From the IMG/VR virus record IMGVR_UViG_3300026484_000087, positions 142,245-206,244 of that record: a DNA stretch of 64,000 nt; one strand, given 5' to 3'. The position numbers and the translations under genes were made by a program. Position 1 is the stretch's first letter; each line of letters starts with the position of its first letter. Positions 7,628-61,089 of the stretch are shown here, one piece after another. Under the pieces are notes generated by a model that had not been told where the DNA came from, did not search any database, and saw nothing but the letters and a program-made list of their open reading frames with translations.

Positions 7628-7662
7628 CATATAGTACATAGGTTAAACCTATGTACTATATG
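7628..7662. terminator. Bidirectional terminator-like inverted repeat
   Basis: Perfect 17-bp arms CATATAGTACATAGGTT-A-AACCTATGTACTATATG between convergent genes. Confidence 0.75.
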
Positions 7663-12801: not shown

Positions 12802-13612
12802 ATTTGTATGCCTCTAATCTGCTCTTTATTCTGGCATATGCTATTTTGGTATCGTTGTTTGGATCTGATGTAGTGCCATTAGGTGTTATATAAACCGATT
12901 CGTCCAAAACTTTTAATAGATCGGTTAATACCGACAATAGGTTTTCTGTACCATTATTGATGTTAAAATGTGAAGCGTTCAGTGTTACTGAGTTGCTTGC
13001 TGTCATTGTAAGATCACTAGCTTCTAAATTAAATGACTTAGTTTTCAACTTTATATCGTTATTAAATACCATACTAAGTAATTCAGCAGCACTGTCAAAC
13101 CCAATTTTATTACCTTTATCATCAAATATTTCAAATAGACCTACTTTAGTATCTATTTTCATATCCCATGTAGTTTCTTCTCCATCATTCTTGGCAGTAT
13201 GTAAGCTTACCAACTTTTCAATATTGTCAAATAGCATACTATATGAATTATCATTGGTTAATTCTTTTGCTTCATCGTCATTACTAAATCTAAAATAATG
13301 AGTACCTTTTGTATGTATCGCAGATTTATCTAATGTGCTAAATACAAAGAACCAATAATAAACACCAGTATCTCGATGTCTAAATATAATTACCTCTTTA
13401 CCAGCATTTAACGGTGGTACCTCATCATGAATATTCTCTAATAAACCCAGCCATGTAGCGTTTAGATTTTGTGGCGGTGCTTCATCTGCAGGAAAGAATA
13501 TCTTTATGTCTTCGTTGTCTATTCTAATACATTTTACCGTATCGTTTCCAACAGAAGTATCTTCAGTAAGTCTGTATAATCCTATAGTCTTTAATCTAGT
13601 TAACGGTTTCAT
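12800..13612 (-). CDS. Baseplate spike-like protein, paralog 1
   Basis: Shares (S/T)LHT..NDGE.TT.D..I.TK.G...I.D.KGN...FDS with the next gene. It has beta-helix-like repeats and a PNGTTSDP...IKSRLE terminus. Confidence 0.6.
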   Translation of the reverse strand: MKPLTRLKTIGLYRLTEDTSVGNDTVKCIRIDNEDIKIFFPADEAPPQNLNATWLGLLENIHDEVPPLNAGKEVIIFRHRDTGVYYWFFVFSTLDKSAIHTKGTHYFRFSNDDEAKELTNDNSYSMLFDNIEKLVSLHTAKNDGEETTWDMKIDTKVGLFEIFDDKGNKIGFDSAAELLSMVFNNDIKLKTKSFNLEASDLTMTASNSVTLNASHFNINNGTENLLSVLTDLLKVLDESVYITPNGTTSDPNNDTKIAYARIKSRLEAYK

Positions 13613-19873: not shown

Positions 19874-20078
19874 AATGTCTCCTTCCGTAATAGACCATTG
19901 ATTATAGGTTCTAACTTTTGTTAGATTATTTTAAATTACCCATAATAAAAGAATCATTAGCTATTTGATTCTTCCCCTATTACTACTTTTATTATATATG
20001 GTTGAAATATATTCGAAACTCAATTTTAACAGTTTTTATAGACTAAGTAATTTTATGATAAAATATAAGGAAATTAAT

Positions 20079-21518
20079 ATGTTAGATAATGAAAAACAAT
20101 ATGCTGCTTGTGTGTATACTGATGGTAGTGCTAATAATATGTTGAAGATATGGGGATGGGGTTCTCACGGTTATATATATGACATTAATGAAAAGCCTAA
20201 GGTTACTAAAAATAAGCCAGTTAATATGGTAGTTACTGACATAGGATATTTAGAACCAGGAGAGTTGAAGATCAAACCAAATGAATTAGTTAATCCAGTA
20301 GTTTATTTAGATTGGTATGGATCTTACCGTAGAGCTGGTACAAATAATGTTGGAGAATTATTAGCTATAATAGAAACAGTAAAAAAATTACTAGAACATA
20401 ATGTTACTAAGATAACTTTATTCTCAGATTCTACATATGCTATTGGTGTATTTAAATCTAGCAAAACTAAAACAAAAGAATCTATAATTAAAAACGTAGA
20501 AGCTAATCAGGACTTATGGTTACTTGCTAAAGATATAAATGATACTGTAGAAAAAAGTAATATAGAGTTAACTATAGAAAAGATAAAAGCACATAATGGA
20601 CATCTTGGTAATCATACGGCAGATGATATGGCTATGCTTGGTAGATACAATTCTACTAAAATAATGAATGATGAAGAGATTGATTTTACATTAAGGGAAC
20701 CACAAGGTTATTGGAAGCCTAAAAATGAAAGACATCCTTTCTTAACAGCTAAACAAATATTCTTTACCAATAACGATAAGAATCCAAATGAGTATTCTTT
20801 ATTAGGTTATAAGGAAGAAAACGAGATAGGTAAAAAAATGCATATAGCCAACTTTGGTTTAGTTGTTTTAAAAGATAAAGATGAGACTATAGACCTTATT
20901 AAGAATACATATAATGAGTTACTGGGAGAACACTCAGTAGTGTCTACTGTTAGAATGGATCTTTTATTTAAACCAGATAACTTTAAATATGTAGAAAGAT
21001 ATGGTAAGAAATGTTTAATGCCTTTAAATAAAAATAGAAGGGGTATAAGTATACTAGAAAAAGAAATAGTGGCTAACTCTATAAATCCTCCAGCGTTAGC
21101 TTATACAGCCTTAAATAACCTAGACAACCTAAGAGTTGTATTAAATGATTTTAACGCTCTGAAGGCAGATAAAGGCTATATAACAGGCAAAGAATTTATT
21201 GACATTACAGATATGTATTATACTACTAATGATAAAGGTAAAAATGTATTTAGACAGGAATTAGGTAATGATATTAAAAGTTTAAAATATGTCTATGAAG
21301 TAGATGATAAAAAAGCAGATCTTATAATTCAATTTGGTAAAGACATACTTGCTAGAAATCCTATGAAGAAACTAGAAAAATTAGAACCTAAAGTATATTT
21401 AGTTATAGTAAATAGTAACAATGTAAAGTTGGACTATTATACCATAGTTGATATAGAAAGTACAGGCGATCAATCTGTATGGAGTAATTTTTATGCAAAG
21501 ACAGTTTTTATAAAGTAA
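20079..21518 (+). CDS. rnhA: RNase HI-like nuclease with C-terminal extension (phiKZ gp155-like)
   Basis: YTDGS, TNNVGELLA, SDSTY and KIKAHNGHLGNHTADDMA motifs. ATG 20079 follows AAGGA. Confidence 0.85.
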   Translation: MLDNEKQYAACVYTDGSANNMLKIWGWGSHGYIYDINEKPKVTKNKPVNMVVTDIGYLEPGELKIKPNELVNPVVYLDWYGSYRRAGTNNVGELLAIIETVKKLLEHNVTKITLFSDSTYAIGVFKSSKTKTKESIIKNVEANQDLWLLAKDINDTVEKSNIELTIEKIKAHNGHLGNHTADDMAMLGRYNSTKIMNDEEIDFTLREPQGYWKPKNERHPFLTAKQIFFTNNDKNPNEYSLLGYKEENEIGKKMHIANFGLVVLKDKDETIDLIKNTYNELLGEHSVVSTVRMDLLFKPDNFKYVERYGKKCLMPLNKNRRGISILEKEIVANSINPPALAYTALNNLDNLRVVLNDFNALKADKGYITGKEFIDITDMYYTTNDKGKNVFRQELGNDIKSLKYVYEVDDKKADLIIQFGKDILARNPMKKLEKLEPKVYLVIVNSNNVKLDYYTIVDIESTGDQSVWSNFYAKTVFIK

Positions 21519-21547
21519 GAGTAGTATAGCATATGCTATACTACTCT
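21518..21547. terminator. 30-bp perfect palindrome
   Basis: AGAGTAGTATAGCATATGCTATACTACTCT between convergent genes. Confidence 0.75.
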
Positions 21548-25320: not shown

Positions 25321-25352
25321 TAACTACTTAGGACATATGTCCTAAGTAGTTA
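25321..25352. terminator. 32-bp perfect palindrome
   Basis: TAACTACTTAGGACATATGTCCTAAGTAGTTA at the stop of the HNH-fusion gene. Confidence 0.75.
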
Positions 25353-26831
25353 CATCTTAACGATTTTTATAAGGTTATTAACCATGCCTATTTGATGGTT
25401 TATTAAACTATAATTAGTCATTGCTATAGATATCAAACTAGCATTATTATCTAGACCAGTAGATAATGCATGTAATGTAGATTTAGTTATTTCAAACTTA
25501 TTATCTTTACTAACAATATGTTCATGTAGCATATTAGTTTTTTCAGCTATCTCTTTAACTAAGCTATCTATTTTACTAAAATTAACCTTACCAAGTTTAT
25601 TTCCTAGAATGGCAGTATCTTCAGCAAGCTTAGGCAATGAAGTTAAATTTGGTACAAGTTTACCAACTGGCATTCTATCGTTGTTAGAGTTAACATCTAT
25701 AACCCCAGATAGATTATTTTTTATCTCATAAGCAACTTCTTCGGTTTTTTCAAAAAGTGTTTTCTTAGGTTTAAAAGATTTTCTGTAATCTTCATCAGAC
25801 ATTATCTTACTTAAGATGACATTTAACTCACTAAGAGAATCTATAATTAAAGAACCTAACATATGTTCATTTTTACTAAGTTTATTTTCAAGTTCTATTA
25901 GGTTAGTGTTTAAACCAATAACGACTGGGGTTTCTCTAGATTCTATACTAGCATAACTTTTATTCTTAATAATTCTCTTAAGAGAACTAATATCACTTCT
26001 AAGTTGTCTAAGTTCTTTATTGCTTTCACCAGATATACCACTTATGGTTTCTGTAACACCAGAGAATAATTCGCTAATAGAATTTAATCTATTTAAAACA
26101 AAGTTATTTATATTACTAATTAAACCATTTTCATTACTAAGCATATTAACCGCTTCATCTACTGATTCAAAACTAAGAGTTTCTTCTAACGTTACTAACT
26201 GATTAACTTTTTCCATATTCTTTTTCCTTTTATCCCATACATCTTGTATGTTCTGTGATTGACTACCCCATTTAAGATTGGTAGCATTACAATTCTCTTT
26301 ATTATCGTCCTTATGCATAACGACAAAACCTTTTGGACCAACTCCATGAAATGCAGTACAAACCAATATATGTACATACTCCATTTTACTTTTGGTGCTA
26401 CCATCTTTAAAAATAGATACTTTAAGATAGTGTCCAGCACTAACACCTTTAGTAAAATTACCTGTTTTCAATGTAAGTATTTCTCCAAGGTTACTCGCCA
26501 GATACTTACTAAATCCAGGTATAGGTTTCCATATTCTATCCATAGCATTTAATGGGACAGGTATCCTATTTGATACATCTACATTAACTGGCAACTCAAT
26601 TGGTATTATGTTTTTATGTATATAAGGAGCTTCCTCATCTACATATAGGCCATCATCTGATAGACTAAATACTTTATAGTACCATCCATCAAGTTTTCTA
26701 TGTTTTTTCTTAATAGCTTTAACAAGGTCTTTTAATGTCTTATACATTTTTATATAACCAGTGCTATTTACCTTAATTTCTATTTTTTTATTAAGTATAT
26801 CTGTTTTATAAATTGGTAAATATAATACCAC
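25350..26831 (-). CDS. NUMOD4-HNH endonuclease fused in frame to a putative head protein
   Basis: GTG start after AAGGAG. NUMOD4 WKPIPGFSKYLASNLG and HNH VHILVCTAF...HKDDNKENCNATNLKW. An internal AAAGGA RBS plus ATG at 26216 opens a 288-aa helical domain with S-x-E motifs. Confidence 0.75.
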   Translation of the reverse strand: MVLYLPIYKTDILNKKIEIKVNSTGYIKMYKTLKDLVKAIKKKHRKLDGWYYKVFSLSDDGLYVDEEAPYIHKNIIPIELPVNVDVSNRIPVPLNAMDRIWKPIPGFSKYLASNLGEILTLKTGNFTKGVSAGHYLKVSIFKDGSTKSKMEYVHILVCTAFHGVGPKGFVVMHKDDNKENCNATNLKWGSQSQNIQDVWDKRKKNMEKVNQLVTLEETLSFESVDEAVNMLSNENGLISNINNFVLNRLNSISELFSGVTETISGISGESNKELRQLRSDISSLKRIIKNKSYASIESRETPVVIGLNTNLIELENKLSKNEHMLGSLIIDSLSELNVILSKIMSDEDYRKSFKPKKTLFEKTEEVAYEIKNNLSGVIDVNSNNDRMPVGKLVPNLTSLPKLAEDTAILGNKLGKVNFSKIDSLVKEIAEKTNMLHEHIVSKDNKFEITKSTLHALSTGLDNNASLISIAMTNYSLINHQIGMVNNLIKIVKM

Positions 26832-36637: not shown

Positions 36638-36671
36638 TACTATAGATGATGGAAATCCATCATCTATAGTA
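36638..36671. terminator. Bidirectional terminator-like hairpin
   Basis: TACTATAGATGATGGA-AA-TCCATCATCTATAGTA between convergent genes. Confidence 0.75.
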
Positions 36672-50652: not shown

Positions 50653-52821
50653 TTAAACTGTTGCAAAGTTTTTAGTAACTTTACCTAGTGACTCTTCAAT
50701 ACCACTAATGTTAATAACAGTTAGAATAGGTAGTTGAGGAACATGTAAGAATCTTGGTAATGTAGAAAGTTCTCTAACGATGCTTCCACCTCTGTTAGCA
50801 ACAACATCTAAAGAAACTTCTGGAGACCAGAAACATACACCAAAACCAAGTGGGTTAACTTTTTCATTTTTACTTGCACCTGTATCACCAAATGAAATGA
50901 ACATTTTACCTTTAACTAGTGGATTTTGAGTAGTAGCTAAATGTACTTCAAACTCATCACCAATTTCAATTTTACCAGTACCATTTGTTAAGTATTGTGC
51001 AGTTCTACTATCTGTACCAATGATTACCGAAGTTTTACCAGCAACACCACCATTAAGAACTTTACTAGCGATAGCGTAGTTAGATTCAATGAACATTTTG
51101 ATAACTTCATCTTTAATTTTACCAGTTAATGTACCTTTAATATCTTCCATTTTCTCACCAGATCTAACTGAGTCAATGTTGTTAGCAATATTTAAGTTTG
51201 TTTCATTATAGTAAGCATCTACAAAGAATCTTGATACACCAAGAATTGCAGCATCTTTAACATTACCATTAGATGTAATTTGTCTTAAAGTTTCAGAGAA
51301 TGAAACAAGAGTATTTACAGCTTCAAGAGACATTTTGATACCAGTGAATGCTACTTGTGAAGCAAGGTATGTTGCATCGTTGTCAGTATCATTAGAGTTA
51401 CCAACTGTTTTAAGAATTGTTACACCTGATCTAACTGGAACAGTATAGATTTGGTTATGAATATCAACACCAACTAATTGACCTCTTTGTCTAATGTTAG
51501 AGTTAGTTGTATAAGCTTCTACAGAGTAAGCTCTAGGTTTACAAGTTTCAATAACTGCAGCAATTGCTTTGTAGTTATCATTATCTTCATCAAGAATATT
51601 TCCACCAGCATCAAGAACTTCAACAAGTTTAACAGAAGAACTGTATACAGCAACATCACCAATTTGAGTATTACCATCACCATGAAGAACAAGTTCAACT
51701 CTAACAGTATAGTTTTGAGCAAGTTGTGCTAAGATTTCAGAACCAGCACCATTCCATTGTTTAGTAGCAGCAGTATTTAAGATCATTCCATCTGTTGTGA
51801 AAGAAAGCATTAAATCTTTGTTATGATCTTGTGTGCTATATGTAAAGTTTGAATGTGGTAACATAGAAATGTTAAATTTGAATGTTTCAGTAATCTCTTT
51901 ATCATCAGCATCTTTACCAGTAAGATCAAAGAATACATCTTGAACTTGAACTCTTCTATCAAGAGCATCAGTATTATCCATAACACCTTTAGCAAGTTGT
52001 GCATCAGTTTGAGAAACACCTAATACAGAAATAGCTTTACCCATTTTTAATGGAGCAGTAGTGATTTTCTCACCTTTTTCAGTATTTACAGTTTTAAGAT
52101 CAGCAGCAAGTACTGCAGCATTTTCTTCTCTTAATACAGGAACAAGTAGGTTTTTATCTACAGATAAGATAGTTGGATCAACGATAGCTTTAACAATTGA
52201 TTTTTTATTAAATTTACCTCTATCAGATGCACCATTAGTACCTCTTGTAACTTCATCATAAAGATTGATAACTCTAGCTTCAATACTAGCACCAGAAGAT
52301 GTAGGATCAATTGTAACAGTTGGGAAGAATAGTTCACCAAATGCATCTTGTTTAGAAGCAAGTAAGTTATATACAACAGAGAAGTAAACAGCAGAGTTAA
52401 TAGTTTGACCATCAAAAGACTCTACAGAGATATTTTCTGTATCCATGATATCTTCAACACCAAGTGCCATAGCATCTACAGTACCAACAACATTTTGTGC
52501 AGTAACAGCTTTAAGGTTATTTAAATTTTGTCTAGCAGCAGTTGGATCCATTGCAAGACCAGCAACTAGTTGTGCAGCTTTTAATTGTGCAGCAGTTGGA
52601 TCAAAATCTTCCATACCTTCAGAAGAGATAACTGAATCAATTGTATTTTGTACAATTTCATTAAGAGAGTCTAAACTAGACTTAGCTGTAGCGGCAGTAC
52701 CTTCATCCATGCTTTCTGAAGAGATTACAACTTGTGTAATTTCTGGTCTATTAGTAAGACCGTGTACTGTTAAACCTGTTTTCATTCCGTCAATAAGACC
52801 TACAATGTTTGTTTTATCCAT
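50653..52821 (-). CDS. Major capsid protein (phiKZ gp120-like)
   Basis: 722 aa with QDAFGELFFPT.TIDP, DNTDALD and N.RQRGQL motifs, S-x-E sites in the prodomain (ISVE/SF) and strongly biased codon usage. Confidence 0.88.
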   Translation of the reverse strand: MDKTNIVGLIDGMKTGLTVHGLTNRPEITQVVISSESMDEGTAATAKSSLDSLNEIVQNTIDSVISSEGMEDFDPTAAQLKAAQLVAGLAMDPTAARQNLNNLKAVTAQNVVGTVDAMALGVEDIMDTENISVESFDGQTINSAVYFSVVYNLLASKQDAFGELFFPTVTIDPTSSGASIEARVINLYDEVTRGTNGASDRGKFNKKSIVKAIVDPTILSVDKNLLVPVLREENAAVLAADLKTVNTEKGEKITTAPLKMGKAISVLGVSQTDAQLAKGVMDNTDALDRRVQVQDVFFDLTGKDADDKEITETFKFNISMLPHSNFTYSTQDHNKDLMLSFTTDGMILNTAATKQWNGAGSEILAQLAQNYTVRVELVLHGDGNTQIGDVAVYSSSVKLVEVLDAGGNILDEDNDNYKAIAAVIETCKPRAYSVEAYTTNSNIRQRGQLVGVDIHNQIYTVPVRSGVTILKTVGNSNDTDNDATYLASQVAFTGIKMSLEAVNTLVSFSETLRQITSNGNVKDAAILGVSRFFVDAYYNETNLNIANNIDSVRSGEKMEDIKGTLTGKIKDEVIKMFIESNYAIASKVLNGGVAGKTSVIIGTDSRTAQYLTNGTGKIEIGDEFEVHLATTQNPLVKGKMFISFGDTGASKNEKVNPLGFGVCFWSPEVSLDVVANRGGSIVRELSTLPRFLHVPQLPILTVINISGIEESLGKVTKNFATV

Positions 52822-55076: not shown

Positions 55077-55105
55077 AGTAGTATACGGTTAAACCGTATA
55101 CTACT
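55077..55105. terminator. Bidirectional terminator-like hairpin
   Basis: AGTAGTATACGGTT-A-AACCGTATACTACT. Confidence 0.75.
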
Positions 55106-55304
55106 TACCTATTTTAATGTTATCTATAATTTTACCAAGTAAATCTTTAGTAAAATCTGATCTAAACATCATAAAGATTGAACTATATAATGCAACAAAA
55201 CCAGTAGTTTCAATAACATCCGGATCCATATTCTTATAAACAGTAAACATATATACTGCTATGAAAATAAAGAAAGCCAATGTACTTTTCCAATTCTTAA
55301 ACAT
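55101..55304 (-). CDS. Small two-TM membrane protein, holin candidate
   Basis: 67 aa with two hydrophobic helices and a charged C-tail. AAAGGA RBS. Confidence 0.4.
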   Translation of the reverse strand: MFKNWKSTLAFFIFIAVYMFTVYKNMDPDVIETTGFVALYSSIFMMFRSDFTKDLLGKIIDNIKIGK

Positions 55305-55376: not shown

Positions 55377-55586
55377 ATGGAATATATTTTAGACATAATT
55401 GGCATACTATGTTTTATGGTGATACTTTATTCATTTACAAATAAAGAAACTATGCCGTGTACAAATGAACAGTGTGACGGTACTATGGAAAGCTTTATTT
55501 ATACTGGCGATGGTGATGGACCAGCTCCAGATCATTTACATTTTAAATGCAATAAGTGTGGAAAAGAAGAACAAATATTACAATAG
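55377..55586 (+). CDS. Small membrane-anchored Zn-ribbon-like protein
   Basis: N-terminal TM, then CxxxxC and CxxC. AAAGGA RBS. Confidence 0.55.
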   Translation: MEYILDIIGILCFMVILYSFTNKETMPCTNEQCDGTMESFIYTGDGDGPAPDHLHFKCNKCGKEEQILQ

Positions 55587-55618
55587 TATACTAAGAGGTT
55601 TAACCTCTTAGTATACTA
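55584..55618. terminator. Bidirectional terminator-like hairpin closing the signalling cassette
   Basis: TAGTATACTAAGAGGTT-T-AACCTCTTAGTATACTA. Confidence 0.75.
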
Positions 55619-56755
55619 GAAATCATACTCTATTTCAAATCTTATATCATGCTGGGGTTTTCTAGAATCTACGTCATATCTTTTAAATCCGCCATTTTGT
55701 ATAACATTATATCCATCTGGCTCATACCTACTTAATCTAAATTTGGCATGCATTTTATTGGTTGCTTCTAGGTCTATATAAACTGTATTCTGTTTACCAT
55801 TTTTAAACATACTATATGTAGATAAAAATCTACCAGTATTTAAGCTAACATAATCATCTTTTATAAGACTATGTTCAAATCCAATTGTCGCATCCCTATT
55901 TATATATGGTACCGTAATGTATTTATTAAAACCCAATACAAAAGAATATCCAGTTAACGTATTACCTAAATTCTCACTATGTGAATAAGCCCCATAGTTA
56001 AAAAACGTATAACCACTATCCATAGAATCATCAAGTATATAAGTGTAACCAAATATATCTGCATTTATATCCCCACCTAACTTTTCGCATGCTTTACCAT
56101 TTATCTTAAAATAATTAAATGATAAATTGTTTTTACTACCTTTAAAACTATACATTAAAGACAGACCACCAACTTCTTTATATGTAGGAGCATACATCTG
56201 GTCTTCATTAATTAGAATAGAATTAAAGAAAACATCTTTAGATAAATAACCTATGTTCATTACATGATTGCCTACATGATAATTTAAATAAGCTCCATCT
56301 GCTATATAATTACTCATCAATGGGTTTATGTTATTCTTACGATCTTGTGGTAAAGTAACAACCGATCCATTATCTGTTCTAAAATCTATTTTACCAGCAA
56401 TGAAACTAAGATTATCATTAATTATATATTTATAATACATCTCATCAATGATTATTAAAGTTATGCTATCCTTTTCATTAAGACTAGTATCTAAATCAGA
56501 TTTATAATCATAATTAAGATACATTATTTCAGTTGTAAGTGATATCATACCGCCATCAACATTCTTTTTATATCTACTATAAAGTAATATGTCCTCCGTT
56601 GCTATATTACCGTAATTCCTATCAACATTAAGGTAACTTAAATGTAATTCATTTTTTAATAAATAACCTTTATCTTTAAGTTCATTGCAACTAACAACAG
56701 TTGTAAATGTAAATAAAGCTAAAATGATTAAAAGTATTTTTTTATTTGTTATCAT
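55616..56755 (-). CDS. Outer-membrane beta-barrel porin-like protein
   Basis: Signal peptide, alternating amphipathic beta-strands rich in Tyr/Gly/Phe, and C-terminal beta-signal IRFEIEYDF. ATG 56755 follows AGGAG. Confidence 0.72.
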   Translation of the reverse strand: MITNKKILLIILALFTFTTVVSCNELKDKGYLLKNELHLSYLNVDRNYGNIATEDILLYSRYKKNVDGGMISLTTEIMYLNYDYKSDLDTSLNEKDSITLIIIDEMYYKYIINDNLSFIAGKIDFRTDNGSVVTLPQDRKNNINPLMSNYIADGAYLNYHVGNHVMNIGYLSKDVFFNSILINEDQMYAPTYKEVGGLSLMYSFKGSKNNLSFNYFKINGKACEKLGGDINADIFGYTYILDDSMDSGYTFFNYGAYSHSENLGNTLTGYSFVLGFNKYITVPYINRDATIGFEHSLIKDDYVSLNTGRFLSTYSMFKNGKQNTVYIDLEATNKMHAKFRLSRYEPDGYNVIQNGGFKRYDVDSRKPQHDIRFEIEYDF

Positions 56756-57023
56756 CAAAAGCTCCTTTAGTTATTTCTATATCACTTCTGTAAAGGCCTT
56801 TTATGCAATCACAGATTTTTCTTTTTTTACTGTAAGAAATTTCTTTATATAAATATTGATCTATTTTATTTTTCTTACATACTCTATACCAACCTTTATT
56901 AGACTTAATATCGTAGTCTATTAAATCTCTATTATATAAAATACCACAACTTGCAATATCAGAATATAGATTTATATTAAATATTAAGATTAGTCCTAAA
57001 AAAACAAAAAAATTTTTGTTCAT
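56742..57023 (-). CDS. Small secreted 4-Cys protein
   Basis: Signal peptide MNKNFFVFLGLILIFNINLYS, with a ~72-aa mature part carrying four Cys. Confidence 0.65.
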   Translation of the reverse strand: MNKNFFVFLGLILIFNINLYSDIASCGILYNRDLIDYDIKSNKGWYRVCKKNKIDQYLYKEISYSKKRKICDCIKGLYRSDIEITKGAFDDNK

Positions 57024-57025
57024 AT

Positions 57026-58417
57026 TTACTCCTTTTTATAAGTATAAGGTTCTACTGGTATCAACAGTTTAAAAATAGTCCCCTCAGATGACGTCTTATG
57101 TAGACTTATCTCTCCTTTATATTTTATAAGTGTTTCTCTTATCACATACATGCCGAGTCCCCTTCCTGATTCAGACGTAAATAATTCTGGTTTATAAAAT
57201 ATCTTTTTAAATAACGATGTAAAGAAACTAGTTTTTTCATGTATTATGTCACCTGATAAAGTTTTACTAGATACTCCATATGCAAATATTAAATCATATT
57301 CTTCCTTAATAATAGGTTTATTATTTTTACCAAGTACACCTGTACCATTATCTATACAATACAGTTGTAACGTTGAATTATTTATTAATTCACATTCTAT
57401 TATAACTTTACTACATTTTGCTTCTACCGAATTTGTAACTAAATTAGAAAGTATATTCATATACTCACCATTTGGTAGACCTCTCAAATGTAATGATTCT
57501 AAAAGTTTCATATTCTTTATTTCATACTCAAAGTGTCTACTTGTAAATATAGATGTAGTAGCAAATAAATTCTTAGTAAGCATTGCCATATTTTTGTTAC
57601 CGTTACTATAGCGATTATCTTTGCTCTCTCTTAATAGAGCTAGTACGCCATGTAGTCTATCTATAGAATTACTTATCTTTTCAATGTAGTCTAATATAAC
57701 CACTCTTGGTAAATATTCATCGGAATTTCTTACTTTTAACTTCATGCTGCAAGTTTTACAATCATCTACATATTGTGTTTGTATAGCGAGCCTTATCTCA
57801 TCAAATAAATCCTTTATTACTGTTATTGGACCAAGCATCTCATGGTGCATCGAACCAGCAACAGTATATTGTAACTTACCTTCTAGAACCGTCTTAACGT
57901 TTTTGTTAGCTAACAATGCCGCAGCTACCTCATTTCTAGCATTTCTAAAATATATAAAAGCATACCATATCAAGAAAAATATAGTAACTGTATAGAATTG
58001 ATTCATTACAACAGAATAATCATATGTATTTAATTCTATAGTCATTTTATGCTTGTCATATTCTATATCAAATGTATCCTTTATAACAATATCTCTTATC
58101 TTTTTTAAGTAAGTATTATCAGTAATTGTAGCATAATCATCATCTCTCATTAAGACATTATTCCTAGATATGTCTGGACTGAAATAAACGCCATCTAACG
58201 TTATTGACTTACAATTACTAGCATAACAAAATAATGATATATCTATGTCATCACTATGATATATTTTATCTATATTAGTCTTATATTCGTTTATAAGATA
58301 AAGTCTTTTATTGTACTCAGTATACATGAATATTATAAACAAACTAATGGCTAATAGAATAGAATGTTTAAAATATATTGCCAGTATATTCCTATTTATT
58401 ATCCATTTATTTTCCAT
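57026..58417 (-). CDS. Membrane sensor histidine kinase
   Basis: Two TM helices flank a ~100-aa extracytoplasmic domain. H-box MHHEMLGP, N-box NLVTNSVEA, G1 DNGTG, F-box LIFAYG and G2 GRGLGMY. Confidence 0.88.
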   Translation of the reverse strand: MENKWIINRNILAIYFKHSILLAISLFIIFMYTEYNKRLYLINEYKTNIDKIYHSDDIDISLFCYASNCKSITLDGVYFSPDISRNNVLMRDDDYATITDNTYLKKIRDIVIKDTFDIEYDKHKMTIELNTYDYSVVMNQFYTVTIFFLIWYAFIYFRNARNEVAAALLANKNVKTVLEGKLQYTVAGSMHHEMLGPITVIKDLFDEIRLAIQTQYVDDCKTCSMKLKVRNSDEYLPRVVILDYIEKISNSIDRLHGVLALLRESKDNRYSNGNKNMAMLTKNLFATTSIFTSRHFEYEIKNMKLLESLHLRGLPNGEYMNILSNLVTNSVEAKCSKVIIECELINNSTLQLYCIDNGTGVLGKNNKPIIKEEYDLIFAYGVSSKTLSGDIIHEKTSFFTSLFKKIFYKPELFTSESGRGLGMYVIRETLIKYKGEISLHKTSSEGTIFKLLIPVEPYTYKKE

Positions 58418-59030
58418 CTTTCTTAATTACCTTTACTATTTTATCATAAATAACTTTATATCTAGTATCTGCTTTAGACATATAGAAATCATCAAATTTT
58501 AATTTAGTATTATCCTCAAATTTAGTTATATATTGACTCATAAGTGGATCACGTTTATTAAGACTATGTGCTGTACAAAATACTATTTGACACTCAGGAA
58601 ACTTTTCTAATATCTCTATAGCGATATCAACTCCATCGTATTCAATTATCTTACCATTAGAGAGTTTTATTGACATTTCTAGAGTCATGTCTAATATAGC
58701 TATACTAAGATCATCTATCTCTTCTAGTAATTTATGCGTAGTGAATCCTGCATAAACTCCTATTGCCTCATACACTTTAAATTCTTTAAGTATATCAAAC
58801 TCATACTGTCTCTTTACTCTGTTAAAGTCTAATTCATATAATGTAAATTGCTCTACGAAGTCATCCATAAGTAATATACTTTTACTAGCCTCTTCATTAC
58901 CCTTAATCAATATAGGATCCATAAGATTATATTGTATGCTTTCTGGGAGATTACTATTTTCTTCTTTTAAATCTGTATCAACTTTAGGTTTCTTATTTAA
59001 ACCAAATATATCTTTCAATTTATTAAACAT
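58407..59030 (-). CDS. Single-domain response regulator (receiver only)
   Basis: Acid pocket LLMDD, phosphoacceptor AILDM, switch FCTA and conserved Lys YMSK. There is no output domain. Confidence 0.8.
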   Translation of the reverse strand: MFNKLKDIFGLNKKPKVDTDLKEENSNLPESIQYNLMDPILIKGNEEASKSILLMDDFVEQFTLYELDFNRVKRQYEFDILKEFKVYEAIGVYAGFTTHKLLEEIDDLSIAILDMTLEMSIKLSNGKIIEYDGVDIAIEILEKFPECQIVFCTAHSLNKRDPLMSQYITKFEDNTKLKFDDFYMSKADTRYKVIYDKIVKVIKKDGK

Positions 59031-59045
59031 CTTTTAGTCCTTTTT

Positions 59046-59504
59046 CTAAATTTTTAATATTGTAGTCAGTATGTATTTCTTCATACTTGAGAATGTATCG
59101 GATATGAGACCAATAACGTATTTGGTAGCTTCTGGATCATATAGATATCCTAACCAAATAAGGAAGAATACCAACATCCCACCGCCTATTATATATGGTA
59201 AATTATGAGTTGTAAATAATTTTGCTTTACTTTTCTTAACATCACCATTAACTTGCTCTGTCATTTCTAATAGCTTTTCCATAATGTTAGTAACATCAGT
59301 TAATAAAATCTCGTTTTCATTTTTCATTAGACTTACGCTATGTTTATTATATGTATGTATTAGAACTATAACTTCATGGAGATCGTCAGGAACATCTTTA
59401 AGTTTTAAAAGTATATTTAAGTCATCTGCTTCTATTCTATTGTTTCTTAAGTCGTCTTTTATTCTGGCTATAGCATCTTTAACAGTAATTATTTTCTTTT
59501 CCAT
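59046..59504 (-). CDS. Membrane protein with C-terminal TM helix
   Basis: 152 aa with hydrophobic IIGGGMLVFFLIWLGYLY. AAAGGAGG RBS; first gene of the cassette. Confidence 0.7.
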   Translation of the reverse strand: MEKKIITVKDAIARIKDDLRNNRIEADDLNILLKLKDVPDDLHEVIVLIHTYNKHSVSLMKNENEILLTDVTNIMEKLLEMTEQVNGDVKKSKAKLFTTHNLPYIIGGGMLVFFLIWLGYLYDPEATKYVIGLISDTFSSMKKYILTTILKI

Positions 59505-59554: not shown

Positions 59555-59584
59555 TAAGTAGACTACAATTAAGTAGTCTACTTA
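59555..59584. terminator. Terminator-like hairpin opening the signalling cassette
   Basis: TAAGTAGACTAC-AATTAA-GTAGTCTACTTA. Confidence 0.7.
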
Positions 59585-59922
59585 ACGCCGTATCTAATAA
59601 AATGATAGCTTCTAACACTGCTAACCATAATAAATCTAGTCACTGGTCCTATTTCCAAGGACTCTAGACATTCTTCAAATATGTCATCAGCAAGTTTATA
59701 CATTTCTTTATCAGTTAGGTAATCATGTAAGATTACCGCTGGCAAATAATCAGATCTATTTGGAGGTAAAAAAATCCAAAATAATCTTGGAACATCAGCC
59801 CCATTTGTTTCGTATCCAGCTGGTACAGTTATCCCATTATAGGTAAAATCTTCTAATAAGACATATCTATCTTTATGCAATGGACTTGTTTTAACAGCTG
59901 AATATATTTCACTTCTTGTCAT
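59578..59922 (-). CDS. DUF1353-family protein
   Basis: ITVPAGYETNGADVPRLFW and AVILHDYL motifs. Confidence 0.8.
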   Translation of the reverse strand: MTRSEIYSAVKTSPLHKDRYVLLEDFTYNGITVPAGYETNGADVPRLFWIFLPPNRSDYLPAVILHDYLTDKEMYKLADDIFEECLESLEIGPVTRFIMVSSVRSYHFIRYGVK

Positions 59923-60580
59923 TATAATCCTTTATAATTTTTTTACAGCTTATAATATGCCTAAATGGATGATCTCCTCTGTTATAAAGTGTTCTATCAT
60001 TAACATATTTAAAGCACATCTTATCCTTACCATTTATAATAAAGATCTTATAAAATACTATAGGTAACCTCATATCAGAAGTTGAAAAATTCTTTTCACC
60101 ATATTTTATCAAATCCAATACCTGAATGGAACCGTATATATTAGAAATATTTCTACTATATGTTTCTACTCTCTTCCAATAATACCTATTTACAGAAGAA
60201 TCCTGAGGAACGCCATTTACGCCTAAAACATAAGTCATTTTTAGAACATCTTTATCATAGTCAAATGTAGCATCATTAGCTAAATGACCTATATCCATGC
60301 GTTGTTTATTTTTATAATAAGCTTTCTTATATGGCCAATATTCCTTTGGTATACCTTTTGGATACCTCCAACTAAAACGTTTTTTGATATTTCTTTTATT
60401 GTTATTGTTTGATTCTACAGAATACAAAACTGCTTTAGTACCCTTATATTTATAATCGTAACAAGATTTATAAATCTTGTTACTGTATATGAAATCACAT
60501 TTATTTTTATTTAAAAAATAATCTGATAGTCCTGATGAGAATAAATTTATTGTTAATAATAGGACTATTAATATTTTCAT
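59909..60580 (-). CDS. Secreted DNA/RNA non-specific endonuclease (NucA-like)
   Basis: Signal peptide MKILIVLLLTINLFS, DIGHLA (DRGH-type), N..PQ...VN..YW and P..FYKI. Confidence 0.8.
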   Translation of the reverse strand: MKILIVLLLTINLFSSGLSDYFLNKNKCDFIYSNKIYKSCYDYKYKGTKAVLYSVESNNNNKRNIKKRFSWRYPKGIPKEYWPYKKAYYKNKQRMDIGHLANDATFDYDKDVLKMTYVLGVNGVPQDSSVNRYYWKRVETYSRNISNIYGSIQVLDLIKYGEKNFSTSDMRLPIVFYKIFIINGKDKMCFKYVNDRTLYNRGDHPFRHIISCKKIIKDYNDKK

Positions 60581-61089
60581 GTCACTTTCACTTTACTGTA
60601 GATGTTATTTATCTGTTTGATTGTCATTCTTTTATAATTGTGTTTCTTATCTTTTAATTTAAGAACACGTTTATTATTACCATCTTGTGCAGCAACATGG
60701 ATCCAACCATGTGGGAAATACTCAGCTATAAGTTCTTTGTACTCTAAATTTTTATTTATATACTTAAGTATTTTCATATACTTAATCTTCTTATTATATG
60801 GTTTAAAATCAACAGCAAAACCATAAGCATGATTAGAATGTTTAGAACTACCTATGGCTAAACATAAGGCAACAGATCTATAGCCAGACGTTATTTTAAT
60901 AGGACCAAACTTATCTCTAAGAGGTTGTAACACCGTATCTACTAAAAACTGTATTCTTTTTAAATACTTAGCTGGCATATCGTTGTTTATACCTTTTCTA
61001 AGTGCAGTATCTGAAATCAAGAATTCATCCAATGTGAAATTCTTAGATAATCTTATTTTTTTAGCTTGTTTTAATGTAATTACTTTCAC
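60577..61089 (-). CDS. Peptidase M15A (D-Ala-D-Ala) putative endolysin
   Basis: SKNFTLDEF, ITSGYRS, S.H..G.AVD and WIHV zinc-ligand motifs. Confidence 0.85.
   Translation of the reverse strand: MKVITLKQAKKIRLSKNFTLDEFLISDTALRKGINNDMPAKYLKRIQFLVDTVLQPLRDKFGPIKITSGYRSVALCLAIGSSKHSNHAYGFAVDFKPYNKKIKYMKILKYINKNLEYKELIAEYFPHGWIHVAAQDGNNKRVLKLKDKKHNYKRMTIKQINNIYSKVKVT

What the first reader, a model, noticed from the sequence alone, without database searches (positions are those of the whole stretch)
55616..59504. Phage-encoded envelope-sensing cassette: response regulator, histidine kinase, secreted Cys protein, porin and membrane protein
Seen: five minus-strand genes packed with gaps or overlaps of 15 nt or less, bracketed by strong hairpins (59555-59584 and 55584-55618). 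The kinase has all H/N/G1/F/G2 boxes and the receiver has DD/D/T/K, so neither looks decayed. A signal-peptide 4-Cys protein and a beta-barrel with a BAM signal follow. The cassette sits between the endolysin/nuclease/DUF1353 genes and a holin candidate. Established: complete two-component systems are uncommon in lytic phages. Inference: this is a self-contained trans-envelope circuit (porin admits a cue, the periplasmic Cys protein binds or modulates it, the kinase signals to the receiver). It might set lysis timing or sense phage density or superinfection, by analogy with T4 lysis inhibition or arbitrium.
Basis: partly seen in the sequence, partly recalled or inferred. Interest (0 to 1): 0.92.

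Follow-up and report, generated by a model that had tools for sequence, protein, structure and literature searches.

The report
Phage two-component sensor in lysis region
An uncultivated giant phage, probably of Sulfurimonas-like bacteria, carries an intact-looking sensor kinase and receiver protein with a membrane partner, a secreted protein and an outer-membrane pore among its cell-bursting genes; the kinase-receiver-membrane trio belongs to a large phage family I found no report of, and it may let phages time lysis by sensing the cell envelope.

Summary
Five tightly packed minus-strand genes (59504-55616) lie between two perfect hairpins. They encode:
- a C-terminally anchored membrane protein;
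- a stand-alone receiver, supported by fold and by conserved DD/D/T/K, although Pfam does not recognise it;
- a two-pass HisKA-type histidine kinase with all catalytic boxes;
- a secreted 4-Cys protein;
- a porin-like beta-barrel.

All five genes are under purifying selection. The same cassette recurs in independent assemblies of related phiKZ-like jumbo phages, so it is neither a chimera nor a bacterial insert.

New findings:
- The conserved core is a trio: membrane protein, receiver and kinase. It appeared wherever enough sequence was available, in 11 of the 13 lineages sampled.
- The receiver family has 196 clusters (at 50% identity) with E<=1e-10.
- It has no match in 50,697 GenBank phages, none in one pattern scan of 185,579 species genomes, and I found no report in the literature.
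- The kinase's periplasmic domain keeps an invariant Cx4C.
- The Cys protein and barrel are accessories found in only some lineages.
- In four lineages the trio is next to an endolysin (three sequence-distinct kinds) and/or a holin-like gene. That gene heads a classical holin-spanin-endolysin cassette in Sulfurimonas phage SNW-1.

The best reading is a phage-owned envelope sensor that acts post-translationally, most likely on lysis timing. That last step is inferred, not shown.

The parts
59555..59584 (.). Upstream boundary hairpin (12-nt perfect arms, 6-nt loop) between the DUF1353 gene and the first gene of the unit
   Evidence: A strong hairpin lies at the same position, just upstream of the membrane-protein gene, in L005, L008, L012 and L013.
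59046..59504 (-). mem152: a helical N-terminal domain of about 100 aa (predicted cytoplasmic), a basic patch, a single TM (aa 104-122) and a tail of about 30 aa. It is the third core partner of the module.
   Evidence: TM segment; family alignment A6. A protein with the same architecture lies next to the receiver and kinase genes in 11 lineages, plus a fragment in L031. dN/dS is 0.05.
58407..59030 (-). Stand-alone receiver (response regulator with no output domain). It has a poorly modelled N-terminal extension of about 45 aa and a beta-hairpin insert after the phospho-acceptor D114.
   Evidence: AF2 pLDDT 85.6. The top Foldseek hits in the PDB are NtrC1, CheY, HupR, ComE and Spo0F receivers, probability 1.0. 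D56, D57, D114, T153 and K186 are conserved. The family has 302 clusters.
57026..58417 (-). Class I (HisKA-type) sensor histidine kinase: TM1 at aa 11-29, a periplasmic domain of about 110 aa with an invariant C64-x4-C69, TM2 at about aa 137-157, a DHp domain with H192, and a CA domain
   Evidence: It overlaps the receiver gene by 11 nt. dN/dS is 0.04.
56742..57023 (-). cys93: a secreted small protein with a cleavable-looking leader. C26 and C73 are invariant, together with S41, G44, W45, R47 and Y57. It is an accessory found in some lineages only.
   Evidence: Homologues follow the kinase gene in L002, L005, L012 and L013, and weakly in L014. It is not a lipoprotein, because the L005 homologue has no lipobox.
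55616..56758 (-). omp380: an outer-membrane porin-like beta-barrel with a leader and a C-terminal beta-signal ending in Phe. It is an accessory found in some lineages only.
   Evidence: AF2 gives an all-beta model with 16-18 strands, pLDDT 62.7. Foldseek matches porins at E=8.5e-11. The L012 homologue hits Pfam DUF3373 at 2.4e-6. The family profile hits the PDB '50 kDa outer membrane protein' at E=0.058.
55584..55618 (.). Downstream boundary hairpin (17-nt perfect arms) that overlaps the stop codons of the convergent genes omp380 and orf69
   Evidence: It is conserved in L002 at 13410-13444.
55101..55304 (-). orf67: holin candidate with two hydrophobic segments and a charged C-terminal tail
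   Evidence: It is 69% identical to the first gene of the holin / i-spanin / o-spanin / M15 cassette of Sulfurimonas phage SNW-1, and it has a homologue in a Sulfurimonas MAG. It lies inside the unit in L005 and directly upstream of it in L008.
60577..61089 (-). Endolysin (Peptidase_M15_3, no signal peptide)
   Evidence: Pfam 3.3e-13 and phrog_894 endolysin 3.8e-33.
59909..60580 (-). Endonuclease_NS with an N-terminal signal-like leader. It is a neighbour, not part of the hairpin-delimited unit.
55377..55586 (+). orf69: N-terminal TM followed by a CxxC...CxxC protein, convergent with the unit. It is conserved in L002 and L005.

Best explanation
This is a phage-owned three-component signalling module. 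It consists of a two-pass HisKA-type sensor kinase whose periplasmic domain carries an invariant Cx4C, a cognate stand-alone receiver, and a tail-anchored inner-membrane protein with a cytoplasmic helical domain. In this phage and some relatives the module is extended by a secreted disulfide protein and an outer-membrane porin-like barrel.

Proposed mechanism:
1. The kinase reads a periplasmic or envelope state. The best guess is a thiol/redox or envelope-integrity cue, with the Cys protein and the barrel modulating or giving access to it.
2. The kinase autophosphorylates on H192 and transfers the phosphoryl group to D114 of the receiver.
3. The receiver has no DNA-binding domain, so it acts by protein-protein contact at the membrane. 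The most likely target is the co-conserved membrane protein and, through it, the holin/endolysin system, advancing or delaying lysis.

What is shown: the gene set, the folds, the catalytic residues, purifying selection, family size and synteny.
What is inferred: actual phosphotransfer, the nature of the signal, the target, and the effect on lysis.

My confidence is about 0.9 that this is a functional phage-lineage kinase/receiver/membrane trio, and about 0.4 that its output is lysis timing. The confidence figure given for this explanation is the one for the whole statement, including the lysis output.
For: Kinase:
- HATPase_c hit.
- The family profile aligns to HK853 through the H-box and CA domain at E=3e-9.
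- All boxes, plus periplasmic C64/C69, are invariant in 11 lineages at about 22-27% identity.

Receiver:
- It has the (beta-alpha)5 fold and its top PDB matches are receiver domains.
- The acidic pocket, T and K are conserved in 153 representatives.

The pair:
- The two genes overlap or abut in 13 lineages.
- Kinase and receiver distances correlate at r=0.81 over 10 deep lineages.

Third partner: a C-terminally anchored protein of 150-200 aa lies next to the pair in every lineage with enough sequence.

Selection: dN/dS is 0.04-0.20 for all five genes.

Phage origin:
- Neighbours are PhiKZ_MCP and divDNAB.
- Source contigs are 167-252 kb.
- The same cassette appears in JGI, ENA and Logan assemblies.

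Link to lysis:
- In the window the order is M15_3 endolysin, then the unit, then holin-like orf67.
- In L005 the holin-like gene lies inside the hairpin-delimited unit.
- In L008 the holin-like gene comes first, then a hairpin, then the trio, a phrog_1128 protein and a phrog_465 endolysin, then a hairpin.
- In L009 a GH108 endolysin directly precedes the trio.
- orf67's homologue heads a classical lysis cassette in SNW-1.
Against: - There is no biochemical evidence for phosphotransfer.
- Pfam does not recognise the receiver. Sequence-level links to canonical receivers are weak (E about 0.2-0.5 against the PDB; 16.9 bits for the L012 homologue).
- In L025, L029 and L030 no recognised lysis gene adjoins the module. 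The only possible one is a weak Phage_lysozyme hit on a cut gene about 4 kb downstream in L030.
- The membrane protein is very poorly conserved in sequence (12-25% between lineages) and matches no holin, antiholin or spanin family.
- Lineages share ancestry, so adjacency to lysis genes is not a set of fully independent events.
- Expression timing is unknown.
Confidence: 0.4

Rival explanations
1. The same functional sensor trio, but its output is not lysis. The phosphorylated receiver would tune another phage or host process: virion assembly, phage enzymes, host metabolism, or host motility through a CheY-like contact. The cue would be environmental conditions sensed in the periplasm.
For: In L012-L014, L025, L029 and L030 the module sits among structural or other genes with no lysis gene next to it. 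The receiver is a single-domain CheY/Spo0F-like protein, and such proteins have many kinds of targets. The probable hosts are Sulfurimonas-like bacteria.
Against: The module is repeatedly adjacent to three sequence-distinct endolysins and to the holin-like gene. The third conserved partner is a phage membrane protein, which argues for a phage-internal, membrane-located target.
Confidence: 0.3
2. Interference with host signalling. The phage kinase or receiver would act as a phosphate sink, a decoy or a cross-talking partner of host two-component systems, for example to silence an envelope-stress or abortive-infection response during infection.
For: Phage proteins that perturb host two-component systems are known, for example PIT4 of phage LSL4 (PMC10714779, listed). 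The receiver has no output domain of its own.
Against: The kinase and receiver have co-diverged as a tightly coupled pair to about 22-27% identity. A search of 5.8 billion proteins found no close bacterial relative of the kinase, and one pattern scan of 185,579 species genomes found none of the receiver. That is the opposite of mimicry of host partners. The family spans phages of 24-44% GC, so probably different hosts, yet it keeps its own third partner.
Confidence: 0.12
3. Phage-phage communication or superinfection sensing. One version has the secreted Cys protein released through the barrel as a signal that the kinase reads in neighbouring infected cells (arbitrium-like in logic). The other has the kinase detecting superinfecting phage material in the periplasm (T4 lysis-inhibition-like in logic).
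For: A secreted protein and an outer-membrane channel are encoded directly after the kinase in four lineages. A leader-bearing nuclease is encoded just upstream. T4 lysis inhibition uses a periplasmic sensor of superinfection (PMC8385771, PMC11413866).
Against: The Cys protein and the barrel are missing from most sampled lineages that keep the trio. The Cys protein is a folded domain of about 65 aa, not a short peptide. A 16-18-strand porin-like barrel is not an obvious protein exporter. No similarity to Aim or RI/T/RIII proteins was found.
Confidence: 0.08
4. An artefact or passenger: a bacterial operon captured by the phage or joined to it by misassembly, or a decaying moron.
For: Before checking, complete two-component systems seemed unusual in phages. 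The barrel family is related to bacterial DUF3373/Omp50-type pores.
Against: The same gene order occurs in several independent assemblies next to PhiKZ_MCP and divDNAB. GC content is flat across the region. dN/dS is 0.04-0.20. No close bacterial homologue of the kinase, receiver or barrel was found. The receiver family has 196 clusters with E<=1e-10, and every sampled context looks phage-like.
Confidence: 0.02

Closest known systems
Classical HisKA-type two-component pairs, e.g. Thermotoga HK853 with its single-domain partner RR468 (PDB 3dge, 2c2a, 4jas; the RR468 pairing is from my own knowledge)
   Same: DHp H-box (H-E-x-x-x-P), N/G1/F/G2 boxes, a two-pass membrane topology, an adjacent cognate receiver with DD/D/T/K, and a receiver that is a single domain.
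   Different: - The pair is encoded by phages only.
- The receiver scores below Pfam thresholds and has a beta-hairpin insert after the acceptor Asp and an N-terminal extension.
- The sensor domain has an invariant Cx4C.
- An obligatory third partner, a tail-anchored membrane protein, is always present.
Single-domain response regulators that act by protein contact (CheY, Spo0F, DivK, CpdR; their functions are from my own knowledge)
   Same: There is no output domain. The best structural matches include CheY and Spo0F.
   Different: There is no CheA/HPt-type partner and no phosphorelay protein nearby. The family-specific invariant residues (T116, D132, G133, D135, H155, K170) are not the CheY-FliM surface. 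The target is unknown.
T4 lysis inhibition (antiholin RI / holin T / RIII)
   Same: The logic is the same: a phage-encoded periplasm-facing sensor placed with the lysis genes that could postpone holin triggering (PMC8385771, PMC11413866).
   Different: There is no sequence relationship. T4 works by direct periplasmic protein binding, whereas here a His-Asp phosphotransfer step would be interposed. Superinfection as the cue is unproven.
LytSR control of the holin-like and antiholin-like Cid/Lrg proteins in Staphylococcus (own knowledge)
   Same: A two-component system coupled to holin-like membrane proteins.
   Different: LytS is a multi-pass kinase of the LytS family and LytR has a LytTR DNA-binding domain, so control is transcriptional. 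Here the kinase is HisKA-type with two TMs and the receiver has no DNA-binding domain.
Three-component systems with an accessory membrane protein (e.g. LiaFSR, YycHI-WalK, MgrB-PhoQ; own knowledge)
   Same: A small membrane protein is co-encoded with the kinase and receiver. In MgrB-PhoQ, periplasmic cysteines link the kinase to the redox state.
   Different: There is no homology. The accessory here has a large cytoplasmic domain and a C-terminal anchor, and it could be the output rather than an input modulator.
agr genes of Clostridioides phage phiCDHM1 (PMC3901668)
   Same: A phage carrying a sensor histidine kinase.
   Different: phiCDHM1 has AgrB, AgrD and AgrC of clear host origin in a temperate phage and, from my own knowledge, no response regulator. 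Here both partners are present, form a deep phage-specific family, and have no close host homologue.
cREC divergent receiver of jumbo phages (PMC7824862)
   Same: A divergent receiver-fold protein in jumbo phages.
   Different: That paper states that cREC is never linked to histidine kinases and is tied to NAD/ADP-ribose enzymes. The present family is always next to a kinase.
DUF3373 / Omp50-type outer-membrane pore families (TCDB 1.B.62 and 1.B.60; PMC4827864)
   Same: A signal peptide, a 16-18-strand barrel and a terminal aromatic residue. The L012 homologue passes the DUF3373 threshold.
   Different: The window protein itself does not hit DUF3373. It is shorter (380 aa against about 500), phage-encoded, and coupled to a kinase operon.

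Membership tests
Class I (HisKA-type) sensor histidine kinase | Phospho-acceptor His in a DHp H-box (H-E-x-x-x-P) | tested here: met
   H192, E193 and P197 are invariant in 11 lineages. The profile aligns to the HK853 H-box. HisKA is hit weakly in 2 of 10 members, best 6e-4, which is below the Pfam cutoff.
Class I (HisKA-type) sensor histidine kinase | GHKL ATP-binding domain with N, G1, F and G2 boxes | tested here: met
   HATPase_c at 1.3e-10, above the cutoff, in all 10 members. N329, D356/G358/G360, F378 and R419/G420/G422 are invariant.
Class I (HisKA-type) sensor histidine kinase | Autophosphorylation and phosphotransfer activity | not testable with these tools
   Needs biochemistry.
Response-regulator receiver (CheY-like) domain | (beta-alpha)5 fold | tested here: met
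   AF2 pLDDT 85.6 with strands and helices in the expected order. The Foldseek top 24 hits are all receiver domains, probability 0.96-1.0, TM-score on target 0.56-0.71 for stand-alone domains.
Response-regulator receiver (CheY-like) domain | Acidic pair after beta1, acceptor Asp at the end of beta3, Thr/Ser at beta4, Lys at beta5 | tested here: met
   D56 96%, D57 99%, D114 100%, T153 83% and K186 93% in 153 representatives.
Response-regulator receiver (CheY-like) domain | Match to Pfam Response_reg above the gathering score | tested here: not met
   No hit for the window protein. The L012 homologue scores 16.9 bits against a cutoff of 30.2. The family profile reaches CheY in the PDB only at E about 0.45. 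By sequence models this is a very divergent branch.
Outer-membrane porin-like beta-barrel (DUF3373 / Omp50 group) | Signal peptide, large antiparallel barrel, C-terminal beta-signal ending in an aromatic residue | tested here: met
   Leader; 16-18 strands at moderate confidence, pLDDT 62.7; porins at E=8.5e-11; C-terminal YDF.
Outer-membrane porin-like beta-barrel (DUF3373 / Omp50 group) | Match to the Pfam DUF3373 model | tested here: inconclusive
   Only the L012 homologue hits it (2.4e-6, 27.3 bits against a cutoff of 26.1). The window protein does not. The link runs window-L013 at 1e-4 and L013-L012 at 3e-9.
Holin (orf67, 55101-55304) | Small membrane protein with a charged C-terminus, encoded at the head of a lysis cassette | tested here: met
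   It is 69% identical to the first gene of the SNW-1 cassette, which runs: this gene, an N-TM coiled-coil protein, an overlapping lipoprotein, then M15. The same layout occurs in a Sulfurimonas MAG. Hole-forming activity was not tested.
T4-type lysis inhibition (RI / T / RIII) | Homologues of the antiholin RI, holin T or RIII | tested here: not met
   None of the five proteins has a PHROG or Pfam lysis-family hit.
Arbitrium (AimR / AimP / AimX) | A TPR-type peptide receptor and a short secreted propeptide | tested here: not met
   No such domains were found. The secreted protein is a conserved domain of about 65 aa with an invariant Cys pair.
Spanins (Rz / Rz1-like) | i-spanin with an N-terminal TM and a periplasmic coiled coil; o-spanin as a small lipoprotein | tested here: not met
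   mem152 has its TM near the C-terminus. In cys93 the residues before C26 include an Asp, and the L005 homologue has no lipobox. The lipobox-like VVSC of omp380 is not conserved in L005.
Known anti-phage defence systems (PADLOC) | Match to a defence-system protein model | tested here: not met
   No meaningful hit for nine proteins of the region.

The most novel reading that the evidence does not exclude
A large phage-specific His-Asp signalling family (kinase, stand-alone receiver and tail-anchored membrane protein) forms a phosphorylation-based lysis clock or lysis-inhibition switch. The kinase would read a periplasmic thiol/redox or envelope cue through its invariant Cx4C, and the phosphorylated receiver would gate holin triggering post-translationally. 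This would be a mode of lysis control, and of phage decision-making, not described for any phage.
Probability: 0.3. Interest if true: 0.9.

Novelty: new variant of a known kind. Interest (0 to 1): 0.72.

Why it matters
Phages are known to sense their surroundings through a handful of systems: T4 lysis inhibition, arbitrium, and borrowed quorum-sensing receptors. I know of none that uses the bacterial signalling workhorse, the two-component system, as the phage's own conserved, self-contained device.

This family has 196 clusters (at 50% identity) with E<=1e-10. It has no match in 50,697 GenBank phages, and I found no paper describing it. If it does set lysis timing, that would:
- add a new principle (phosphorelay control of holins);
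- give a handle on how uncultivated jumbo phages of vent or sulfidic bacteria decide when to burst their hosts;
- supply compact, orthogonal kinase/receiver pairs for synthetic biology.

Even if the output is something else, a phage-specific three-component sensor with an invariant periplasmic Cx4C is a well-defined, testable target.

Tried and rejected
- Direct sequence identification of the receiver failed. Pfam, NCBIfam and PHROGs gave nothing, and PDB phmmer and profile searches gave only E about 0.2-0.5. Structure prediction and residue conservation were needed instead.
- The kinase, receiver and barrel have no relatives in GenBank phages by DNA or tblastn.
- The receiver pattern scan of 185,579 species genomes found nothing.
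- Word-based protein searches found only 3-7 relatives per protein and badly understated the family size. The exhaustive profile search showed 302 clusters.
- I considered the small Cys protein as an o-spanin and omp380 as a lipoprotein, because both have lipobox-like sequences. I rejected this because the motifs are not conserved in the L005 homologues, and cys93 has an Asp in the motif.
- I considered mem152 as an i-spanin or a known holin/antiholin. Its topology is the wrong way round for an i-spanin, and it has no family hits.
- I considered a defence or superinfection-exclusion system. PADLOC gave no hits.
- The sigma-70 promoter scan was uninformative: 53 sites found against 51 expected.
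- The two bracketing hairpins are not specific to the cassette. They belong to a genome-wide set.

Full report
**Setting.** The window is the end of a 206-kb IMG/VR contig (IMGVR_UViG_3300026484_000087). GC content is uniform at about 29%. Near the finding it encodes a divergent DnaB helicase typical of jumbo phages (Pfam divDNAB 1e-103; tblastn hits to Ralstonia, Burkholderia, Erwinia and Pseudomonas jumbo phages). At 50653-52821 there is a 722-aa ORF whose counterparts in related contigs carry PhiKZ_MCP. The window also has ORFs of more than 2000 aa, one with a lysozyme domain. It has no tRNA. The only GenBank phage with any similarity in the region is Sulfurimonas phage SNW-1. The orf67 family also occurs in a Sulfurimonas MAG and a Helicobacteraceae MAG. 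The host is therefore probably a Sulfurimonas-like member of the Campylobacterota; this is an inference.

**The observation.** Five minus-strand ORFs occupy 59504-55616, with spacings of +15, -11, +2 and -17 nt. Perfect hairpins lie at 59555-59584 and 55584-55618. They are real but not special to this cassette: the window has 21 perfect hairpins with arms of at least 10 nt, against 2.1 in shuffles, and most sit between genes. I read them as the phage's general unit boundaries. A hairpin lies directly upstream of the first gene of the module in L005, L008, L012 and L013 as well. The five genes are therefore best seen as one transcription unit; this is an inference.

**The kinase (57026-58417).**
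- It hits HATPase_c at 1.3e-10.
- A profile of ten family members aligns to Thermotoga HK853 from the H-box through the ATP-binding domain (E=3e-9).
- Two members touch HisKA weakly.
- In 11 lineages that share only about 22-27% identity, H192/E193/P197 (H-box), N329/E332/A333 (N), D356/G358/G360 (G1), F378 (F) and R419/G420/G422 (G2) are invariant.
- There are two hydrophobic spans (aa 11-29 and about aa 137-157) around a domain of about 110 aa that should face the periplasm.
- That domain is otherwise unconserved but keeps an invariant C64-x4-C69 in all 11 lineages. The same motif is in L032, and the L025 kinase has no other cysteine.

**The receiver (58407-59030).** Sequence models fail. 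There is no Pfam, NCBIfam or meaningful PHROG hit, and PDB searches give only E about 0.2-0.5 to receivers.
- The AF2 model (pLDDT 85.6) has the beta1-alpha1...beta5-alpha5 order of a receiver, with an extra beta-hairpin after beta3.
- The top 24 Foldseek matches in the PDB are all receiver domains, including NtrC1, CheY, HupR, ComE, DrrB and Spo0F, with probability 0.96-1.0.
- The phosphorylation residues are in the right elements and conserved: D56, D57, D114, T153 and K186 are invariant in the first eight homologues. In 153 representatives, each under 50% identical to the others, they are 96, 99, 100, 83 and 93% conserved.
- There is no output domain, only a poorly modelled N-terminal extension of about 45 aa.

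**The other three proteins.**
- *mem152.* It has a helical N-terminal part of about 100 aa, a Lys-rich patch, one TM at aa 104-122 and a short tail. By the positive-inside rule the large domain is cytoplasmic; this is an inference.
- *cys93.* It has a leader and four Cys. Across six homologues C26 and C73 are invariant, together with S41, G44, W45, R47 and Y57.
- *omp380.* It has a leader and ends in a classical beta-signal. It is predicted, at moderate confidence (pLDDT 62.7), as a 16-18-strand barrel that matches OmpM1, chitoporin, OprO/OprP, OmpT, AlgE and Campylobacter MOMP (E down to 8.5e-11). Its L012 homologue passes the Pfam DUF3373 threshold. TCDB lists DUF3373 as a putative outer-membrane pore family clustering with Omp50 (PMC4827864).

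**Not a chimera, not decayed.**
- The same five genes, in the same order and next to the same helicase and capsid genes, occur at 83-90% protein identity (L002-L004) and at 46-69% (L005-L007). These come from JGI, ENA and Logan assemblies of different samples.
- dN/dS against L002 is 0.05, 0.07, 0.04, 0.20 and 0.08 for the five genes. This is similar to the endolysin and the helicase. Synonymous sites are partly saturated, so the ratios are approximate.
- No close bacterial homologue was found for the kinase, the receiver or the barrel.

**What is core and what is accessory.** Deeper relatives come from other jumbo-size contigs: L012 (167 kb), L013 (252 kb), L014 (227 kb), L008, L009 and L025-L032.
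- The receiver gene is always immediately followed by the kinase gene, with spacing from -41 to +22 nt.
- A protein of 150-200 aa with a single TM near its C-terminus lies next to the pair. It is upstream in ten lineages and downstream of the kinase in L030.
- The Cys protein and the barrel follow the kinase only in the window/L002 group, L005, L012 and L013. L014 has a distant Cys-protein relative but no barrel.
- Kinase and receiver distances correlate at r=0.81 over 10 deep lineages, consistent with inheritance as a pair.
- An exhaustive profile search with the receiver family found 302 clusters (at 50% identity) with E<=1e-3, 196 with E<=1e-10 and 81 with E<=1e-30. Their lengths run from 133 to 309 aa, median 220.
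- Loci span 24-44% GC.
- The family has no match in 50,697 GenBank phages.
- I found no paper describing it. The jumbo-phage survey PMC7824862 mentions only a different, kinase-independent receiver, cREC.

**Link to lysis.**
- orf67 (55101-55304) is 69% identical to the first gene of a textbook cassette in Sulfurimonas phage SNW-1. That cassette runs: this gene, a 127-aa protein with an N-terminal TM and a coiled coil, an overlapping 79-aa lipoprotein, then peptidase M15. The layout is repeated in a Sulfurimonas MAG. orf67 is therefore a well-supported holin candidate.
- Window: M15_3 endolysin, nuclease, DUF1353, hairpin, the unit, hairpin, the convergent orf69, then orf67.
- L005: the orf67 homologue lies 15 nt after the barrel gene, inside the hairpin-delimited unit.
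- L008: the order is orf67 homologue, hairpin, membrane protein, receiver, kinase, a phrog_1128 protein, an endolysin (phrog_465, 1e-18; VanY/M15_4-like), hairpin.
- L009/L024: a GH108 endolysin directly precedes the trio.
- The window and L008 enzymes share no BLAST similarity but are both M15/VanY-type peptidases; GH108 is unrelated. The adjacency has therefore survived endolysin replacement, or arose more than once. I consider this the strongest functional clue.
L025, L029 and L030 have no recognised lysis gene next to the module. The only possible one is a weak Phage_lysozyme hit on a cut gene about 4 kb downstream in L030.

**Mechanism proposed.**
- *Shown:* an intact-looking HisKA kinase with a periplasmic Cx4C domain, a receiver with a complete phospho-acceptor pocket and no output domain, and a co-conserved tail-anchored membrane protein. 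In this phage there are also a secreted disulfide protein and a porin-like barrel.
- *Inferred:* the kinase senses a periplasmic or envelope state and phosphorylates D114. The receiver then acts by protein contact at the inner membrane, most plausibly on mem152 and through it on the holin/endolysin system, to set lysis time. The Cys protein and the barrel tune or feed the sensor in the lineages that have them.
- *Rivals:* a non-lysis output, interference with host signalling, communication or superinfection sensing, and artefact. They are scored in their own sections.

**Comparison and novelty.** The parts belong to known superfamilies, so this is not a new kind of molecule. What I could not find described is:
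- the phage-only family;
- the obligatory third membrane partner;
- the invariant periplasmic Cx4C;
- the output-less receiver;
- the embedding of the module in lysis regions.

It works like a classical two-component system at the front end. It may work like T4 lysis inhibition or LytSR-Cid/Lrg in purpose, but it is a member of neither. Other viral proteins are annotated as response regulators or histidine kinases (BFVD hits; phiCDHM1 AgrC, PMC3901668), so a signalling gene in a virus is not new in itself. I rate it a new variant of a known kind, with interest 0.72.

Noticed in passing
window, whole (e.g. 7628-7662, 21518-21547, 25321-25352, 36638-36671, 55077-55105): There are 21 perfect hairpins (arms 10-17 nt, loops 0-6 nt) against 2.1 in shuffles. 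Many stems share TAGTA/TACTA-like words, and most lie between genes. They look like a genome-wide family of bidirectional terminators or regulatory palindromes of this phage.
   Followed up: partly
window 59909-60580 (-): The non-specific DNA/RNA endonuclease (Endonuclease_NS, 2.3e-16) has an N-terminal signal-like leader, so it is probably exported to the periplasm. It sits between the endolysin and DUF1353 and is conserved in L002 and L005.
   Followed up: partly
window 55377-55586 (+): A 69-aa protein with an N-terminal TM and a CxxC...CxxC (zinc-ribbon-like) tail is convergent with the cassette. It lies between the cassette and the holin candidate and is conserved in L002 and L005. Its role is unknown.
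   Followed up: no
window 57751-57762 (kinase aa 220-223): A cytoplasmic CxxC insert lies after the H-box helix of the kinase. It is present in most but not all lineages, and the L013 kinase hits Pfam 'zf-like' there. It could be a second, cytoplasmic metal or redox site.
   Followed up: partly
window 142-7620 (+): A 2492-aa ORF carries a Phage_lysozyme domain at aa 2170-2297. It is probably a virion-associated, tail lysozyme-like giant protein.
   Followed up: no
window 25350-26831 (-) and 19965-21518 (+): One ORF carries HNH_3 and NUMOD4 domains and looks like a homing endonuclease. A 517-aa ORF carries an RNase H domain.
   Followed up: no
L008 6516-6971 and L028 3744-4193: Homologous proteins of about 150 aa (E=5e-22; phrog_1128) follow the kinase gene in two distant lineages. 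They share a His...Cys pattern that suggests a permuted papain-like hydrolase. In L008 the protein lies between the kinase and the endolysin.
   Followed up: partly
L010 (Sulfurimonas phage SNW-1) 4035-5199; L021 3998-4761: A compact cassette of holin, i-spanin, overlapping o-spanin and M15 endolysin is annotated in GenBank only as hypothetical proteins plus 'peptidase M15'. The same layout occurs in a Sulfurimonas MAG.
   Followed up: partly
L012 6704-7279, 11943-12746, 12763-13542: Three paralogous proteins that all start M-[IV]-LEINKK flank the module in L012, near a prohead protease gene. They may be head-internal proteins.
   Followed up: no
window 56686-56700 (omp380 aa 20-24): A lipobox-like TVVSC sequence lies at the end of the omp380 leader in the window (TVSSC in the closest relative). 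It is absent from the L005 homologue. Lineage-specific lipidation of a barrel protein cannot be excluded.
   Followed up: partly
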